Shown: in pieces, positions 10,650-19,126 of the stretch
Position numbering within the stretch: position 1 is the first letter of the stretch
Layout of the letters: each line of letters opens with the position of its first letter
Origin: Dimorphilus gyrociliatus
Lineage: Eukaryota > Animalia > Annelida
Direction: 5' to 3'
Assembly: GCA_904063045.1 (NCBI GenBank)
Contig: CAJFCJ010000002.1
Coordinates: 3,219,891-3,283,890 of the forward strand
DNA length: 64,000 bases
Made by a program: the position numbers and the translations under genes
The notes under the pieces: generated by a model
Seen by the model: the letters and a program-made list of their open reading frames with translations, nothing else
Database searches by the model: none
Told to the model about the DNA's origin: nothing

Positions 10650-13600
10650 ATGGGGAATGGTTCGAGCGTCACTCATCCTCGAGTTATTTACGTCGAAATT
10701 GCATCTAAAGTCGAGAAGGTATTTGAATATATTCTTTCTTTTTATTAAGAAATATAATAGAGAATTGTTAAAGGAAAGCATATTTTCAACACTAATTCTT
10801 TCTTTTCAACAAAAAAAGAAGTCAAAGTAGATAATTACTTTTTGTTTAATACTAGAACAAGAACATCTTTATTATCAGTGTTGTGCTTATTAATTAACGA
10901 TAATATCTCAAAAATTACTCCATCGATTTATAAAACAATATATTTACAATATATTTCGTACACGCTACCGTCGCTAAGTTACCCATTCGCTCGACTCTAA
11001 TTTCTACGATGTAAACACTTATAAATAATGGATTATGAATATATCTATGTTAAGGATATATAGTATAAACAGCAGTAGAGAATAACTGTTACTTTTAAAA
11101 AATTTATTCCTTATCTATTGTAATTATTCTTTAAATTATAAACATGTTTTGTAGTTAAAAAAAACTGTTAATAGTCTTGTCATACTGCATTTAAACGTAA
11201 TTATCAAACAGTTTATATGTGACTTACTTATATGTTATATGTAAATTCGATGTCGATAAGTCAATTTTCTAAGAATGAAAGCTATACGGAAAAAATTGAT
11301 TCAAGTTAATTGTATAGTCAATGGAAAGAGAGACAAATTGCGTAAATATCATTGTTAAGTAACGAAGAAATCCTCATTATTATCCTCTGTAAGATAGCAT
11401 TTAGAAGCAGTATTATATTTTTTATTTTAATGAAAGATAAAAATTGCATCATCATCCAACATTCTTATGTATGTAAGCCAACCTTTTAACTAACAGAAAG
11501 GAAGTACTTTGTATGTTCTAACGCTTATTTGAGAATAGTAGAGAGTATACAGACCCATTTTATAATAACAACGGATGAATTAGTATTCAATATTTTTATA
11601 AATAAGTTTATAATGATACTAAGGAGGATAGATAATAAAGGGAAATAATTTGAAAAGCTTGATCGTGTCTTAATCTTAAGGACCAATTAAGCATAAAGTA
11701 AATTTCTTTTACAGCTTGTCTTCACTTCCAACTGTAGTGGAAGAGATATTCAGGAACAATTGGCTCAACTGTGCGGAGCAAGCAGGTCAGATTTAAAAGC
11801 AAATAATTATTTATGAATATTTTTCTATTTCTAAAAAGGTATGCTTCTGTTTCTTTGAAAAATCAAGATGGGTCTGTTATCGCTCTGTCACCGGCAATGC
11901 CATCGAATAGTCAGAGGTAAGAGGCAAATTAATATTAATTACTATAATTACAATATATAGTATAGTAATATTTATAAATGATTTTTATTCAATACATATA
12001 TATACATACGTATAGACAGATATATAGCTAAAATATTTACATATAATATTTATATACTGAATATTTAGGGTAATTTCAAACATTTTTTCTAACAATCTAC
12101 TATTAAATTTATTATAAATATAAAATAACTAGAAATACCATAGAAAATATTGTTATACAACTGCAAGTCTATGATAAATTCATAGAAATGCATTGTATGG
12201 AAAAGAATGTATATATGGAAATAAAATGAGGTCTATATATAAATGTTTAGATTTGTATATGCTTCATTTTTTATATTTTTATTGCTGGCTGTAACTTTTT
12301 AATCTTATAGTTTAGCAGAAAGTGTAAATGATGTATAGGTTTCAAATACCTTTAAATAAAAAAAATCTCTCATTTAATAGTAAAGTGTATTACTACACAG
12401 ATATATACAGTATACAGTATATATACATAAAAAAAGCTTACCCTTCAAGCGAAATCTTTGATTCAACGTTACTATTGACGTCATAGCTTTTCACCTCCCT
12501 CTACTCTCTTCTAGTTCTGATAATTAATGTCACGCTTAATCTGTACAGATAAATTAGGGTATTTTTGTTTAGAAACCAATATATTTAATGAAATTTTGTA
12601 GAAATAACCTATAGTTATCTGAAAGTTGTTAAATTCTTATTTTTCTTACCTGTGAAGAAAAAAAGAATTTTTATGAATAAATCTAAATTTATAATGAAGC
12701 GTGTGTATAAATATAAGCATACATATATCTATAATTTATATAACTTGAGATTATAGCGCATTTTAATCTACTCTTTAAGCTAATAACAACCCTCGTAAAA
12801 TTAGTTAACATTACCTTGACGATTTCTTATTGAATGTGTCTGTCCTAAATTTGTGTTAATGCATACAACAGTCGTAATAGAGTAGGCTTCAAAGTGCTCT
12901 TATAAAAATTACGTTTGGTGTCAAATGAATCATAAATGTCATTAATTACGACTATCTTTCATGTTATCTCTTTATAGCGCACCTTATAAAGTTGTGGTGA
13001 TTCAAGAGCCTCAAAACCAAACTAAAAGTAATTGAAATTTCTATTATTAAATTCTTTTTTTATTAAATAGTATTAAACTATTACAAGGTGATTCATACAT
13101 AATAAAGATCATGTACTTTCACTAGATGAACTACATTTACTGCAAGAATGCTTAATAAAGGTTGTCGAACAGTTTAAAGATTCATTAAATAAAGCTTTTA
13201 GTATGGACGAAGTAAAGGAGGATGTAAATAAAAGATTAACAGCGCTTGAAAGGCGATTGGAAAGTAATGATTAAGATTATAGAGAGATAATGTATTATTA
13301 AAATAAACCAAATGTTTCAGTTGAAGGTATGAAGGCTGTTGATATCGAAAAATGTAAGAAAGAAATTTACGACATCAAAGAACAGATTTCGTCTGCTCAA
13401 CGAAAGGTTTTGGATTATCAGATGAAGTAAATATTAAAATATATACCTAATTTAGCGCGTATGCGATAAATTTTGAGCCTATTCAGATTAGATTTTGATA
13501 ACGCAACTAATAATAAGAGCAATAAGAGTAATATATTCATTTATATACTCAAAATATATATATATATATATATACATATTTAATAAAAAAGAGAAACTTT

Positions 13601-16600
13601 ACATCAAGTTGTTACTAGCTAAAAAATGACTAAGATAAACATGAAACTAGCAAAAAAAGAAAGGCTAACTTTTTTCTATCATAAAAAGATTAAAAGACAC
13701 TATTTTTTAATAATTAAATTCTTCTTCTCTTGTTTATTACACCTTGTATACTTTTTATATAAAAAATTTTTAGACGTCCTTACCGTCGAGTCCTGAAAGT
13801 AGTATAGATCCATTTCTGAATAGCTTTTATCCGAATATTGTTGCCTAAAGCAACTGTCTTAAACCTTTCTACTCTTTGGAAAAGAATAAGTAATTATTAG
13901 AATTGCTTAACGAACTTACTTACCCTATTAGTTACGAAACCTGCTGGTGTAATTTTTAAGAGGTTCTTTAATAATCACCATTTTCCTTTTGATTAATTAC
14001 GAGATTTTCAATACTTTACAAATAAAATAGCTAGCTAATTTATTCAATTAACATCAAAAAAGAAAGGCTACAAGTAAAAGATCAATGGAAAATTCTTTTT
14101 TTTTTGTTTTCTACCTTTTCAAAGTTTGACGAAAGCAATAAAAGTCAGTTAATGAAGTCGTAAAAGAACTAAATCTATTCATTACAAAGTACCTTTTTAC
14201 ATATGATACTTGTTTCATGTTTTATGTATTTTTCAAGTTATACTTTTATGATGTATGGTAAAAATGGAATGCGTTATCGATAACTAATCTAATGGCCTTT
14301 ATCTAATTTGTGTAACAATAACAACGATACCTAGCGCAATGTCAGACGATCGGAAACTACAAAATCTTCGTCGACGTGACGTTTTGACATATCCTAAGGT
14401 AAAGATAACCAAATCAATGGAAGCAAATTAAAATAATCTGTTCTTTCTTTAAACAAACGCAAGTGTGTGTGTTTTTTTTCTTGCTGCATTTCTATCTCTA
14501 TCTTTCTCTTTTCTTTTACTCATTCTCTCTTTTATTCTATAGATGCAAAACATTCAGTTTAAATTATCATATAAATGATATTTTTTTGGCATTAAGCTAA
14601 AGTTCCTTTACCGATAGGGGTTTTACGATATTATGTTATCAATAAAAATAGATTCTTAAAAGAGATAGTTACAGAATTTAACAGTCGTTGTGCGCATGAG
14701 CGATTAGCCAGAATTTAATTTCTCATTAGCTGTTGTGCGCTTGTTTTTCATTATTTAAAGCGGAAACAACGAAAAGAACGGCAATAAGAAAATACGCATA
14801 CCAAATTTTCAGAAGGTATTCTTTCTCTTTAGCAAAGTTTACTGTATAAATTTATATAATTTTAGCATGATTATGAAAAGAAATTAAGACATTCGTTAAT
14901 ATCATTAACATCTGCATCCGTAAAAGTTTGATATGATATAATCCTCTCTAAGGGAAACTTTTCGAAAGAAAATTTTCTATTTTGTAGTTTTTTCCTTTAT
15001 TTAATAATAAGGAAATATATATATATATGTTGTACTGAACAAAAAGGGAAAAAACTATACCCTAACGATGGAGAAGAGAAGAAAAAGCTTTTTTTTCCAA
15101 CGTACCTTACAAGGCTTTTTCTTTCAATCTTTTTCAGTAGAGAGTTTTTTTTTCAAACACCAACTTTTAATTGAAAATAAAAAAAATGTTCAGTACTTCA
15201 CTAAAGCATGATTTCCAATTTTCTCCATTTTTCTTTTTTTAATAGAATCTCTCTATCTCTATCTCTCTCTACGTCTCTCTCTTCTCATAAACTTTTTAAC
15301 ATTTTTGACTATTTTCTCCTTTTATAATATCATCTCGTTCTTTTAATGAATGTATACAAAAAGACAATACTTTTTAAGATGATAAACAATATCTAATGCC
15401 ATTAATACGGAAATAACAATTAACTGCAAAAAGTTACAATGCTGCATATTATGTTATTTTCCCTGGCATTTTTTCAAGTAATAAATATAAAAGCATGTTA
15501 AAAAACAGTACAAAGTTTTATGTTGTATTCTAACCATTTAACATTCTTTTAGTCAAGTTTCATTTGTTGTTTTTTTTTGAAAATATCCTACGTACTTATG
15601 CACTATTCTATTTATTTTAACAAAATTAAATTTTGCAAAGATGACTAGATGAAATAAATTAAATATACAGTATAAATAAATTCATATACATATATATACT
15701 GTATATATGTTATTATAATGGAAATACTGTGTAAGAAGTATTCATTTGCAAATGTTTATATATACTGTATATACTGTATAATAGATAATATTTTCTATAT
15801 GTTTTTACTTTATAAAAATCTTTAAATATCTTTTACAATGCAGTATACACTCTCGCAAGAAACTATAGCTTACCTGAAACAACCAACGTTTGACATATGG
15901 CATTGGGAACCGAATGAGGTTAGTTTAACTATTTTAATTTACCTATAGTTGGTATACTTATGTAATTTTTTATTTCTTATTATTCCTATACAGATGTTAA
16001 GTCTTCTCGAGCATATGTATCATGAATTGAATCTTGTTCAAGAGTTTAACATTAATCCTATAACGTTAAAGAGATGGCTGGTAATAATAATATTTTATTA
16101 TATTATTATAGCATTATTACTATCTATGTAAATTAACTAAATAAGAAAATGTTTTTTCTTTGTTTTTTAATTAATTAGCCGCTAACATTTAACCAACTCT
16201 TTCAAGAGATTTCCTCTCCTTCTTTTCTCTTTCTTAATGCGTAATTAATCAAGATTAGAAGCAATACTTTTTATTTTGTTTACACTCGGCGGTTTTCATT
16301 AGCAATCTCGATTAGCTCATTCATTTAGATTTTCTTTTTATCTCTCGTAGTTGGATAAAATGTTAAGTACAATAAAAGAGGAAAGGAAATTTCTTAGTTT
16401 GTATCTTATTATAAAAGTTAGTCGAGTGCATCTTTAAAAACTATTATTCGCTTTAAAATCTAAACAAAAGAATTCCTACAGCTCTGCATACAAGAAAACT
16501 ATAGAAATAATCCTTTTCACAACTTTCGCCATTGCTTTTGCGTAACCCAAATGATGTATGGAATGATAAACTTATGTAAACTTTGGGAAAAGATGAGCAG

Positions 16601-17918
16601 AGAAGATTTAGGAATTTTATTAACAGCCTGCATATGTCACGATCTCGATCATCCTGGTTACAATAATACTTATCAAATAAATGCCAGGACTGAATTAGCT
16701 ATACGTTACAACGATATTTCGCCGTTGGAAAATCATCATTGCGCAATAGCATTTCAAATCTTATCGAATCCAGAAACGAATATATTCTCAAATGTAGACG
16801 CTCCGACTTTTAAAAGGATAAGATCGGTATGTATTTTTTAAAAAAAGTAACGTTTTGTCACTCCTTTACCACCTTGATAAGATAATTAAATAGTTTGGGC
16901 ATTAAAAGCCTGTAAAACTATAATTTCCCCTCTAAAGATCTTTGTATCAAAATATGAAAGACTATTTTTATATTGATAATATTTTGGAAAGATGAGATAT
17001 GGATCATTTTCTCTAAAAATATAATATATAAATAGACATTGTTATGGTATTAAAAAAAAACATATCTATAAAAAAGAGAGAGATACCTGTAATTAAAGGA
17101 AAGTTGTAATGATAATTTAGGAGATCAGACAGTTAATTCTTGCGACTGACATGGCTAAACACAAGGAGATTTTAAGCAGCTTTCTACAAATTGTTGAATC
17201 ATCTTTCGATTTTAATTCGGAGGAGCACATATCATTGGTAATTAAAGATTTTTCTTTTTTCTCTTTCCCAAATTCTTTCGCAGGGCGTGATTATGCTGAT
17301 TTTAGCAACTGACATGGCACGTCATAACGAAATTCTGGAAGCTTTTAAAAGTAAAATCGGTAAATTCGATTTTTCCAAGGAGGATCACGTCAACTCGGTA
17401 AATATCTTATTTATAGCATTTTCACGCCATTAGAAAGAACTTGTGATATACTTAATTAAACTCTATTAGTTAATTATCCAAAATATTTTATGTAATACTT
17501 AAAAGCTATACACCCTTTAAAGCTTAAAATGGTGCTGATAAAATGCTGCGACATCAGTAACGAAGTAAGACCTTTTGAAGTTAGCGAGCCATGGGTTGAT
17601 TGTCTTCTCGAGGAATATTTCAATCAATCGGATAAAGAGAAAGAACAAGGCCTACCAGTTGCTCCATTTATGGATAGAGAGAAAGTTACGAAGCCAACTG
17701 CTCAAATTGGATTTATAAAATTTGTTCTTATTCCCATGTTTGAAACAGTGGCAAAAGTAAAACATTAATTATTTCGTTTCTAAATTGCTCTCCTATAAAA
17801 ACATTTATCTCTACAGCTTTTTACTGAACTTGAAGATGTCATGGTAAAACCATTGACGGGAGCCAGGGATCGCTATGAAAAGATGAAAGAAGAAGTTAGT
17901 TCATCAGATACAAAATGA
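10650..17918 (+). CDS. PDE9A: cGMP-specific 3',5'-cyclic phosphodiesterase 9 (PDE9A-like)
   Basis: Exons 10650-10718, 11715-11785, 11839-11916, 12978-13027, 13126-13263, 13321-13426, 14335-14398 (or 14761-14815), 15844-15918, 15994-16080, 16482-16826, 17284-17397 (or 17121-17237), 17523-17756, 17817-17918, all phase-compatible. N-terminus [17 protein letters not shown] resembles PDE9A; [26 protein letters not shown] and TAQIGF motifs are intact. Confidence 0.93.
14335..14398 (+). other. PDE9 alternative exon 7a ([21 protein letters not shown])
   Basis: ctag| acceptor, |gtaaag donor; phase 2 in, phase 0 out; resembles vertebrate PDE9A RRDVPTYPK. Confidence 0.8.
14761..14815 (+). other. PDE9 candidate alternative exon 7b ([18 protein letters not shown])
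   Basis: ttgtttttcattatttaaag| acceptor, AAG|gtattc donor; same phases as 7a; ends IPNFQK, comparable to VPTYPK/VLTYPK. Confidence 0.6.
17121..17237 (+). other. PDE9 catalytic-domain alternative exon 11a
   Basis: tttag| acceptor, |gtaatt donor; phase 0/0; encodes [39 protein letters not shown]. Confidence 0.8.
17284..17397 (+). other. PDE9 catalytic-domain alternative exon 11b
   Basis: ttctttcgcag| acceptor, |gtaaat donor; phase 0/0; encodes [38 protein letters not shown], close to human [38 protein letters not shown]. Confidence 0.85.
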
Positions 17919-19126
17919 TTTATGGCAAGATTTTTCTCTTTCATCGCTTTTTTTCTCTCTTTCATTATTTTACCTTTGAAAAAATACGTATGATAAAAGA
18001 CCCTCTACATTCTCTCTTTTGCACCCATTTACGATTGTAATTCAAAAGTGCACTACTATAAATGTAACGCTCTTTTCTTTTATGGTATATTATAAAGCAC
18101 GTCCAGTTTATAAAATTTTAACATTAATTGATGAAATTATTAGCTATAATTCCCGAATTATCGCAACAGATGGATGAAAAAAGTCAAGTCAACTCTTAAC
18201 GTCTAACAACTCTATTGGGATAAATAATCTTCAAGAATAAAACAGTTGACCATTTACTATTTTATCTATATTTATATGTATTTGTATACTCTATATACTA
18301 TATATATATATATAGAAATATGTGTACAAAATAATAATATCCATACGATGTATTAATATAAATTTATATACTATCTTAACTTAATAGTTTTTAATCAGTT
18401 TTCTTTTATTCTCACTTATTGTAGTTATTTAGTTGATTCTATTTGTTTTAATAATTTATTCAATGTTCTAAATTTAGTGATAAAAGTAATTATTAATCAA
18501 AAATGAAAGAAAATGAAAAAAAAAAAAAGATTGATATGATAAAAATCTAATAATCTTTCATTCCTTTATATTTCTTGTAGCATTTTCGTACTTTTACTGC
18601 AAAGGTTGGAATGAAAAAAAAAAAACCTTTTTTTTATGCAAAATTTCTTTTTTTTATAATTTATAATTAGCTGTCAATTAATTGTCATAATTATGTCTTT
18701 ATGTCTTTTCTTTATTTTCCAATAAAAAAAGACTTTATCGATTTACGTTCTTATTCTAATTTATGTTTTTTGAAGTATGAAACCAAGAACTGGAAAAAAA
18801 TCATCAAATTGGTTTGAAAACCACAACATATTTATTATCTTTTCTAATAAACTAAAAATAAGATGGATAAATTTTTCCTTTTGAAGGATTTTATATATAT
18901 TTTCCTTGCTTGCTCTCACCAATCCATTAGAGAGAAATTTCACACCCCTAGGGTTGCCTTAAGTACTAAATAACTATGGAGACAGGAAGTTATCTCGTCT
19001 CTGATCATAAGATCTTGAAAAAAAACCCGGTAAATGAGTCAATAAAAGCAGAATTTCTATTTATTCAGATAAAGGGTAATAAATTTTCCATCAGGCGAGT
19101 GTTAATTTGAAAATTTCTTTTAAATT

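What the first reader, a model, noticed from the sequence alone, without database searches (positions are those of the whole stretch)
17121..17397. Tandem mutually exclusive exons inside the PDE9 catalytic core, separated by only 46 nt
Seen: two intact homologous phase-0 exons both encode the LILATDMA-H segment but are otherwise strongly diverged (39 versus 38 aa). Both have good splice sites and no stops. The 46-nt spacer is shorter than any other intron I could delimit here (minimum 53 nt). Known: the ATDM motif lines the metal/solvent pocket of class I PDEs (Met365 in human PDE9A2 contacts inhibitors); too-short spacers are a recognised steric way to enforce mutual exclusion; reported vertebrate PDE9A splice variation is mainly N-terminal. 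Inference: one gene yields two catalytic domains that may differ in kinetics, dimerisation or inhibitor sensitivity. The cGMP-selectivity residues (TAQIGF, EEYF) lie in a shared exon.
Basis: partly seen in the sequence, partly recalled or inferred. Interest (0 to 1): 0.78.

Follow-up and report, generated by a model that had tools for sequence, protein, structure and literature searches.

The report
Swappable catalytic-core exon pair in PDE9
This small marine invertebrate's PDE9 gene, which encodes a cGMP-degrading enzyme, has two neighbouring versions of one exon in the enzyme's core. Real messenger RNAs carry one or the other, so one gene makes two enzymes that share the same active-site residues but differ on a nearby surface.

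Summary

- **The exons.** Exon 11a (17121-17237, 39 aa) and exon 11b (17284-17397, 38 aa) are homologous phase-0 exons, 46 nt apart. Both match human PDE9A residues ~355-392 and Pfam PDEase_I positions 106-144.
- **RNA evidence.** Spliced RNA contigs show 10>11a, 10>11b, 11a>12 and 11b>12. None shows 11a>11b or skipping of both.
- **Conservation.** A relative's contig (L001) keeps the same layout with a 43-nt spacer. Both exons are under purifying selection: dN/dS is 0.23 for 11a and 0.07 for 11b, and all 8 differences in a closer relative are synonymous.
- **Origin.** 11b is the canonical type; 11a is the faster-evolving copy.
- **New here.**
  - A conserved long-range RNA stem (-33 and -37 kcal/mol; 0 of 1000 shuffles reach it) pairs 11b's acceptor with an intron element just downstream. 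Two relatives with a single exon lack it.
  - 11a has a weak pyrimidine tract and 11b a strong one.
  - The pocket residues Met365 and Ala366 are identical in both exons, so the two forms probably differ on a surface rather than in direct inhibitor contacts.
  - A second organism (L004) has a tandem pair in reverse order.

This is a new instance of a known mechanism. I found no paper reporting it for PDE9. The scan has noted this same stretch before (s1-081390), read in another window or again. It has also noted many exon pairs of this kind elsewhere in the genome.

The parts
16482..16826 (+). Constitutive exon 10. It encodes the HD motif [11 protein letters not shown] and ends ...FKRIRS in phase 0.
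   Evidence: Pfam PDEase_I positions 1-103, E 1.8e-41. RNA joints 16080>16482 and 16826>17121/17284.
16827..17120 (+). Intron upstream of exon 11a. Its acceptor is purine-rich and weak (36% pyrimidine in the last 28 nt). RNA contigs contain it unspliced.
   Evidence: X8 record 17 lies unbroken over 16798-17149, while the other introns have no contig. Pyrimidine content.
17121..17237 (+). Alternative exon 11a (E-type, 39 aa: [39 protein letters not shown]).
   Evidence: Joints 16826>17121 (X8) and 17237>17523 (X8, X3). All 8 X2 differences are synonymous. dN/dS against L001 is 0.23.
17238..17283 (+). 46-nt GT..AG spacer between the two alternative exons. It holds a 20-nt CU-rich tract and the conserved CCAAATTCTTTCGCAG.
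   Evidence: It is 43 nt in L001 with 85% identity. No RNA contig splices it out.
17284..17397 (+). Alternative exon 11b (G-type, canonical, 38 aa: [38 protein letters not shown]).
   Evidence: Joints 16826>17284 and 17397>17523 (X8, X2). dN/dS against L001 is 0.07. Its first 22 residues are identical to the single exon of L003.
17265..17299 (+). Stem arm 1: the end of the pyrimidine tract, the AG acceptor and the first 16 nt of exon 11b.
   Evidence: Inverted repeat I1. Consensus fold. Duplex -32.7 kcal/mol, reached by 0 of 1000 shuffles.
17413..17447 (+). Stem arm 2: an intron element 16-50 nt downstream of the 11b donor, complementary to arm 1.
   Evidence: The core is 27/29 identical in L001, where the rest of the introns are 37-46% identical. 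The L001 duplex is -37.0 kcal/mol. It is absent in L002 and L003.
17461..17477 (+). Second conserved intron block (CTATTAGTTAATTA). Its role is unknown.
   Evidence: 14/17 identical in L001. Its pairing with the 11a donor is no better than shuffles in the window.
17523..17756 (+). Constitutive exon 12. It encodes [14 protein letters not shown] and TAQIGF.
   Evidence: Pfam PDEase_I positions 151-226, E 8.8e-29. Joints. Translation.
17817..17918 (+). Last coding part of the gene (...SSSDTK followed by a stop).
   Evidence: Joint 17756>17817 (X2, X3). Translation.

Best explanation
**What is shown.** A tandem duplication of one catalytic-core exon of a PDE9-type cGMP phosphodiesterase gene has become a mutually exclusive exon pair. 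Each mRNA takes 11a or 11b between exons 10 and 12. This gives two full catalytic domains. They share every pocket and metal-site residue encoded here (LILATDMA, H, the EIL..F core face, FDF, E.H). They differ in the four residues before LILATDM, at alternate positions of the helix after ATDM, and in the following loop. In that stretch 11b is lysine-rich and 11a is acidic or neutral. Both exons are used, in separate spliced RNAs, and both are kept by selection.

**What is inferred: how exclusion and choice work.**
1. The 46-nt spacer (43 nt in a relative) is too short to be removed as an intron. The only adenosines that could serve 11b as a branch point lie at most 34 nt from the 11a donor. 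Co-inclusion is therefore blocked at the spliceosome.
2. 11b has the strong CU-rich acceptor and would be the default. A conserved stem of about 25-29 bp pairs this acceptor with an intron element just downstream of 11b and loops the exon out. When the stem forms, splicing shifts to the weak acceptor of 11a.

**What is inferred: function.** The two enzymes probably differ in a surface used for regulation, partner binding or fine kinetic tuning, not in substrate or inhibitor contacts.

**Confidence.** The figure given (0.85) is for the shown part, a real, selected, mutually exclusive pair. For the two-part mechanism I put about 0.5.
For: **Sequence and homology:**

**RNA.**
- X8 contigs are at least 99% identical to the window and spliced, so they are RNA. 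They carry 16826>17121, 16826>17284, 17237>17523 and 17397>17523.
- One 172-nt contig runs exon 10 > 11b > exon 12.
- X3 has one contig running 11a > 12 > 13.
- X2 has 10>11b and 11b>12>13.
- No run shows 17237>17284 or 16826>17523.

**Selection.**
- All 8 X2 differences in 11a are synonymous third-position changes.
- Against L001, dN/dS is 0.23 for 11a and 0.07 for 11b.

**Layout.** It is conserved in L001 and in an unspliced X2 contig covering 17080-17312.

**Stem.**
- It was found as inverted repeat I1 and appears in the consensus fold. The single-sequence fold has z = -2.76.
- The duplex is -32.7 kcal/mol in the window and -37.0 in L001, against shuffle means of about -13. None of 1000 shuffles reaches it.
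- The intron arm is 27/29 identical in introns that are otherwise 37-46% identical.
- L002 and L003 have a single exon and no such duplex. L003 uses GGT GTA where the window has GGC GTG.

**Acceptors.** Pyrimidine content is 0.36 for 11a and 0.86 for 11b, in both species.

**Pocket residues.** Met365 and Ala366 contact PDE9 inhibitors (PMC6089849) and are invariant in both exons.
Against: - All the RNA evidence is assembled contigs, which drop rare variants. Low-level co-inclusion or double skipping cannot be excluded, and relative use cannot be measured.
- Both co-inclusion and double skipping would stay in frame, so nonsense-mediated decay would not hide them.
- The branch point of 11b is unmapped, and the minimum spliceable intron of this species is unknown. 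Median introns here are already short: 66 bp if this is Dimorphilus gyrociliatus (PMC7854359).
- The stem has no covariation. Both arms are invariant in the two sequences available, and arm 1 is constrained anyway as an acceptor plus coding sequence.
- The link between stem and exon pair rests on two lineages with both against two with neither.
- No enzyme data exist for either form.
Confidence: 0.85

Rival explanations
1. The exon pair is real and mutually exclusive, but exclusion and choice rest on only one of the two proposed devices. Either the short spacer acts alone, and the stem is a fortuitous or otherwise-used conserved element such as a splicing-factor site. Or the stem plus trans-acting factors act alone, and 46 nt is in principle spliceable in this short-intron genome.
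For: Introns in this gene go down to 60 nt. The species' median is reported as 66 bp, with splicing adapted to short introns. So 46 nt is not far below the working range. The stem shows conservation but no compensatory changes.
Against: The spacer is kept short, and is even shorter (43 nt), in L001, while the neighbouring introns changed length by tens of nucleotides. The stem energy lies about 7-8 sd beyond shuffles in both species.
Confidence: 0.35
2. Exon 11a is a young, decaying duplicate that is spliced in as noise. Only the 11b enzyme matters.
For: 11a evolves faster at the protein level: 8-9 of 39 residues differ from L001 (one search prints 8, one search counts 30/39 identical), against 2 of 38 for 11b. 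It has a weak acceptor, and the intron before it lies unspliced in contigs of all four runs.
Against: There are no stops or frameshifts in three lineages. dN/dS is 0.23, and the closer relative shows 8 synonymous and 0 non-synonymous changes. All core and pocket positions are kept. Fully spliced 11a>12>13 mRNA contigs occur in two independent studies (X8 and X3). 11a is as far from 11b as from other animals' PDE9 exons, so it is not young.
Confidence: 0.06
3. The two exons are normally both included, or the duplication is an assembly artefact.
For: Co-inclusion would stay in frame (117 nt + 114 nt).
Against: No 17237>17284 joint appears in any of four runs, while all four single-inclusion joints do. 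Both exons map to the same Pfam profile positions, so co-inclusion would duplicate a core helix. The copies are only about 60% identical in DNA. The tandem layout is seen in independent contigs of two other lineages.
Confidence: 0.02

Closest known systems
Alpha-tropomyosin exons 2/3: mutual exclusion by steric hindrance, with repression of the default exon through its long pyrimidine tract (textbook knowledge, not tested here)
   Same: Two adjacent alternative exons, with the donor of the first too close to the branch point and acceptor region of the second. The downstream exon has a long CU-rich tract and looks like the default. The spacer here is 46 or 43 nt.
   Different: The branch point is not mapped here. 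The exons here are homologous duplicates. The species has very short normal introns, so the margin for steric exclusion is narrow.
Chicken beta-tropomyosin exon 6B and other exon-looping or splice-site-sequestering RNA stems; more loosely, the docking/selector pairings of Dscam, 14-3-3xi and Mhc in insects (from memory)
   Same: A conserved intron element base-pairs with the splice-site region of one exon of a mutually exclusive pair. This would hide that exon and shift the choice to its partner.
   Different: Only one stem was found. There is no common docking site with competing selector sequences. There is no covariation and no functional test.
Human PDE9A (for example PDB 2HD1, 3DY8, 4QGE)
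   Same: It is the best structural match for both exons, at residues ~355-392. The ATDM motif with Met365 and Ala366, EEYF and the TAQIGF glutamine are all present in the gene.
   Different: Reported vertebrate PDE9A variation is N-terminal (my own knowledge). No alternative catalytic-core exon turned up in the paper searches.
Other mutually exclusive exon pairs noted by this scan in the same genome (beta-arrestin, p38, ACE, TRPV and others)
   Same: The same genomic habit: tandem homologous exons inside functional cores, several reported with RNA support.
   Different: A different gene family. Those notes are AI leads that I did not check.

Membership tests
Class I cyclic-nucleotide phosphodiesterase, PDE9 subfamily | PDEase_I (PF00233) catalytic domain with the HD metal motif | tested here: met
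   Exon 10 scores E 1.8e-41 (positions 1-103, with [11 protein letters not shown]). Exons 11a and 11b cover positions 106-144. Exon 12 covers 151-226.
Class I cyclic-nucleotide phosphodiesterase, PDE9 subfamily | Closest to PDE9 rather than to other PDE families | tested here: met
   Both alternative exons hit PDE9A chains first, 100- to 10^7-fold better than PDE2, PDE7 or trypanosomatid PDEs. This was tested exon by exon only; the joined protein was not searched.
Class I cyclic-nucleotide phosphodiesterase, PDE9 subfamily | High-affinity, cGMP-specific hydrolysis | not testable with these tools
   Needs enzyme assays. Only the motifs EEYF and TAQIGF were seen.
Mutually exclusive exons from tandem exon duplication | Adjacent homologous exons of near-equal length and the same phase, each with AG/GT sites | tested here: met
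   117 and 114 nt, both phase 0, 18/38 residues identical.
Mutually exclusive exons from tandem exon duplication | Each exon is joined to both constitutive neighbours in mRNA | tested here: met
   All four joints are present in RNA contigs.
Mutually exclusive exons from tandem exon duplication | The two exons are never together in one mRNA, and never both absent | tested here: inconclusive
   No such joint appears in four runs. These are contigs, which drop rare variants, so raw reads are needed.
Mutually exclusive exons from tandem exon duplication | Both copies are kept by selection in relatives | tested here: met
   L001 and X2.
Steric-hindrance type of mutual exclusion | The distance from donor to branch point is below what the spliceosome can use | tested here: inconclusive
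   The spacer is 46 or 43 nt, and candidate branch adenosines lie at most 34 nt from the donor. The branch point and the species' minimum are unknown.
RNA-structure-controlled mutual exclusion | Conserved complementary elements at a splice site and in an intron | tested here: met
RNA-structure-controlled mutual exclusion | Compensatory changes, or competing docking/selector pairings | tested here: not met
   No pair has changes on both sides, with two sequences available. No competing pairing beats shuffles.

The most novel reading that the evidence does not exclude
The E-type/G-type exon pair may be old rather than lineage-specific. In that reading it is shared with at least one other invertebrate lineage: L004 has both types, and its E-type exon groups with 11a. 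PDE9 would then be a class I phosphodiesterase with an anciently maintained swappable catalytic-core helix and loop. In this lineage a bistable RNA device would set the choice: the 11a donor lying next to 11b's branch region, plus an exon-looping stem. The swapped surface would direct the enzyme to different partners or cGMP pools.
Probability: 0.2. Interest if true: 0.65.

Novelty: new member of a known kind. Interest (0 to 1): 0.5.

Why it matters
Isoform diversity in cyclic-nucleotide phosphodiesterases is usually described as N-terminal or regulatory. The catalytic domain is treated as fixed (my own knowledge).

Here one gene makes two catalytic domains by swapping the helix that carries the ATDM pocket motif and the loop after it. 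RNA evidence and selection support both forms.

This offers a natural experiment on what that surface of the PDE9 fold does. It is also a compact case in which the cis-elements that enforce and tune mutually exclusive splicing can be tested directly: a 43-46-nt spacer and a single conserved stem of about 25-29 bp.

It also adds to the picture, from other notes of this scan, that this compact genome makes heavy use of tandem alternative exons in the functional cores of its proteins.

Tried and rejected
1. **Search of 11a against 1.84 billion representative proteins.** Only one a-type relative came up (P0004). The other hits are single canonical exons of other animals.
2. **Word-index searches.**
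   - With the 11a open reading frame: P0004 only.
   - With the 11b open reading frame: three distant b-type exons.
   - With an E-type alignment: a lineage with AKHKEIL in a single, G-start exon (L007, P0031). That motif is therefore not diagnostic of 11a.
3. **JGI metagenome scans.** No relatives found.
4. **Pairing of the 11a donor with the conserved block 17461-17477.** It is no better than shuffles in the window (316 of 1000) and borderline in L001 (32 of 1000). I dropped it as a structure.
5. **Purine/pyrimidine-tract pairings between intron 10 and the spacer.** These are low-complexity and I did not pursue them.
6. **Rfam on the whole window.** No match.
7. **Exact look-up of window ORFs to name the organism.** They are not in the collection. 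I could not verify the organism myself.
8. **Paper searches for a PDE9 or PDE catalytic-core mutually exclusive exon.** Nothing relevant turned up. This is a limited test of novelty.
9. **Contigs for P0001, P0025 and P0031.** They could not be read because the files were too large.

Full report
**1. The observation**

The window is AT-rich (about 28% G+C) and carries a PDE9-type gene on the + strand with short GT..AG introns.

- Exon 11a (17121-17237, 117 nt) reads [39 protein letters not shown].
- Exon 11b (17284-17397, 114 nt) reads [38 protein letters not shown].
- Both are open only in frame 0, are bounded by AG and GT, and are separated by a 46-nt GT..AG spacer.
- Each exon on its own finds human PDE9A as best solved structure, at residues ~355-392 in PDE9A2 numbering (E 4.8e-6 and 2.1e-9).
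- Each matches Pfam PDEase_I at profile positions 106-144 (11a) and 106-134 (11b). Exon 10 covers positions 1-103 and exon 12 covers 151-226.

The domain therefore needs exactly one of the two. Taking both would duplicate a core helix. Taking neither would delete the ATDM motif. Both errors would stay in frame, so nonsense-mediated decay could not clean them up.

**2. RNA evidence**

One run (X8) holds 73% of the sampled words of the stretch. Three RNA or probable-RNA runs hold parts of it. All were laid on 15800-18200.

- **X8.** Its contigs are at least 99% identical to the window and are spliced, so they are RNA. One 172-nt contig runs from exon 10 through 11b into exon 12.
- **X3** (a marine metatranscriptome) has one contig running 11a > 12 > 13.
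- **X2** (organism A, a few per cent diverged) has 10>11b and 11b>12>13.
- **Joints not seen.** No run has a 17237>17284 joint or a 16826>17523 joint.
- **Limit.** These are assembled contigs. They show presence, not absence, and they cannot be used to rank the two forms.
- **Intron 10.** X8 also has a contig lying unbroken over 16798-17149. That is the intron before 11a left unspliced, while the other introns of the gene have no contig. X1, X2 and X3 likewise hold contigs that run from this intron into 11a. This fits slow removal of that intron, whose acceptor is purine-rich (36% pyrimidine, against 86% for 11b).

**3. Relatives and selection**

*Search for a-type relatives.* A search of 11a against 1.84 billion representative proteins found a single a-type relative, P0004. 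This is an ORF that reads 11a, the spacer and the start of 11b. Its contig L001 has the same layout: exon 10, 11a, a 43-nt spacer, 11b, exon 12, exon 13.

*Selection, window against L001, Nei-Gojobori counts.*

| Exon | Synonymous changes | Non-synonymous changes | dN/dS |
|---|---|---|---|
| 11a | 8 | 10 | 0.23 |
| 11b | 6 | 2 | 0.07 |
| 10 | 50 | 4 | dN 0.014; synonymous sites saturated, no ratio |
| 12 | 17 | 0 | ~0 |
| 13 | 5 | 0 | ~0 |

*Closer relative.* Against X2, all eight differences in 11a are synonymous third-position changes. An unspliced X2 contig (17080-17312) spans 11a, the spacer and the start of 11b. Both exons are therefore maintained as coding sequence, and an assembly artefact is excluded.

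*Which copy is canonical.* 11b is the canonical type. Its first 22 residues are identical to the single exon of a Tara metagenome contig (L003), and it groups with L002, L003 and P0022. 11a is the faster copy. It is as far from 11b (18/38) as from other animals' PDE9 exons (up to 23/38), so the duplication is not very recent.

**4. How widespread is the pair**

- **Single exon only.** Five other PDE9 loci have one exon within the range I could read:
  - L002 and L003, with about 430-455 nt read upstream.
  - L005, L006 and L007, where the whole stretch from exon 10 to exon 12 was read.
  - L008, with about 1.2 kb read upstream and 4 kb downstream.
- **A second pair.** One further contig, L004 (a different organism, 40% G+C), does carry two intact tandem versions, in the opposite order. 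A G-type exon (122-238, 39 aa) is followed after a 666-nt intron by an E-type exon (905-1018, 38 aa, beginning [14 protein letters not shown]). Both have AG/GT sites.
- **Common origin?** A FastTree on about 38 residues places this E-type exon next to the 11a clade with support 0.84. That is weak. Whether the pair has a common origin or arose twice stays open.

**5. Mechanism: what is shown and what is inferred**

*Shown.* The spacer stays short (46 and 43 nt) and is 85% identical between the window and L001. The flanking introns are 37-62% identical and changed length.

*The spacer.* It consists of:
- GTAATTAAAG,
- a 20-nt CU-rich tract,
- then CCAAATTCTTTCGCAG.

Its only adenosines lie within 11 nt or at 32-34 nt of the 11a donor. 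If 11b's branch point lies in the spacer, it is very close to that donor. This is the geometry of steric exclusion. It remains an inference, because the branch point is unmapped and this genome splices short introns well.

*The stem, found here.*
- The stretch 17265-17299 covers the end of the pyrimidine tract, the AG and the first 16 nt of 11b. It is complementary to 17413-17447, in the intron just after 11b.
- The consensus fold of the window and L001 closes this stem around exon 11b. The single-sequence fold has z = -2.76.
- The duplex is -32.7 kcal/mol in the window and -37.0 in L001. Dinucleotide shuffles of the intron average about -13 (sd 2.6-2.7). None of 1000 reaches the observed value in either species.
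- The intron arm's core is 27/29 identical between the species. The single indel falls in an internal loop.
- L002 and L003 have a single exon and no such duplex. L003 spells the first two codons GGT GTA, where the window and L001 have GGC GTG. Those G+C-rich codons form the core of the stem.

*Inferred model.* The stem hides the strong acceptor of 11b and loops the exon out, which shifts splicing to the weak acceptor of 11a. There is no covariation, because both arms are invariant in the two sequences available. Arm 1 is also constrained as an acceptor and as coding sequence. The argument therefore rests on the conserved intron arm, the energy, and the presence/absence pattern (two lineages against two).

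**6. What differs between the two enzymes**

- **Invariant in both exons:** LILATDMA, H14, E16-I17-L18, F21, FDF, E and H.
- **Pocket residues:** Met365 and Ala366, which contact PDE9 inhibitors (PMC6089849), fall in the invariant ATDMA.
- **Variable positions:** the four residues before LILATDM (EIRQ against GVIM), alternate positions of the helix after ATDM, and the loop before FDF. There, 11b has KSKIGK and 11a has LQIVESS.

This pattern suggests a solvent-exposed face with a charge change, with the core and pocket kept intact. I therefore expect differences in regulation, partners or fine kinetics rather than in direct inhibitor contacts. This is inference only.

**7. Organism and context**

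I could not name the organism with my own tests. Earlier notes of this scan call the genome Dimorphilus gyrociliatus, a miniature marine annelid, and list many mutually exclusive exon pairs in it. These are unchecked leads.

The genome paper for that species reports a median intron of 66 bp and splicing adapted to short introns (PMC7854359). That fits the introns seen here. It also narrows the margin for a purely steric explanation.

**8. Comparison with what is known, and novelty**

Tandem-duplicated mutually exclusive exons, steric exclusion and splice-site-sequestering stems are all known devices. My paper searches found no report of a mutually exclusive exon in PDE9 or in a PDE catalytic core. 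The library is incomplete, so this is a limited test.

I file the finding as a new member of a known kind. It has unusually complete support for a sequence-only lead, and it offers a compact, testable cis-regulatory layout.
Noticed in passing
window 17647-17686: Contigs of all four runs share only this 40-nt stretch of exon 12 and then diverge. Their flanks read [34 protein letters not shown] second, expressed PDE9-like paralogue therefore exists elsewhere in this genome and its relatives.
   Followed up: partly
window 16827-17120: The intron before exon 11a lies unspliced in an X8 RNA contig (16798-17149), while other introns of the gene have no contig. X1, X2 and X3 also hold contigs that cross from this intron into 11a. 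This may be slow or regulated removal linked to the exon choice.
   Followed up: partly
L004 122-238 and 905-1018: Another organism (Logan SRR12008146, 40% G+C) has two intact tandem versions of the same PDE9 exon in reverse order: G-type, then E-type, 666 nt apart. No RNA was checked and the organism is unknown.
   Followed up: partly
window 16482-16826 compared with 17284-17923: Synonymous divergence from L001 is much higher in exon 10 (50 changes in about 65 sites, 0.76) than in exons 11a to 13 (0.24-0.37). This is unexplained. It could reflect RNA-level constraint in the 3' part of the gene or a different history of the two parts.
   Followed up: no
window 14335-14815: Another first-stage note (s1-084702) claims a frame-enforced mutually exclusive exon pair in the same gene, just before the catalytic domain. 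I did not examine it.
   Followed up: no
window 17924-18168: An X3 contig skips 245 nt after the stop codon with GG..CA ends. This could be a non-canonical 3'-UTR joint, or a difference or artefact in a relative.
   Followed up: no
window 17015-17060: A deep X8 contig covers only this A/T-rich part of intron 10 and then runs on unlike the window (loose end at 17060). It is probably a shared low-complexity or repeated stretch of another transcript.
   Followed up: no
window ~10650-10745: An open frame begins [17 protein letters not shown].... This looks like an N-myristoylation-type start and may be the first coding exon of this PDE9 gene. It was not checked against RNA.
   Followed up: no
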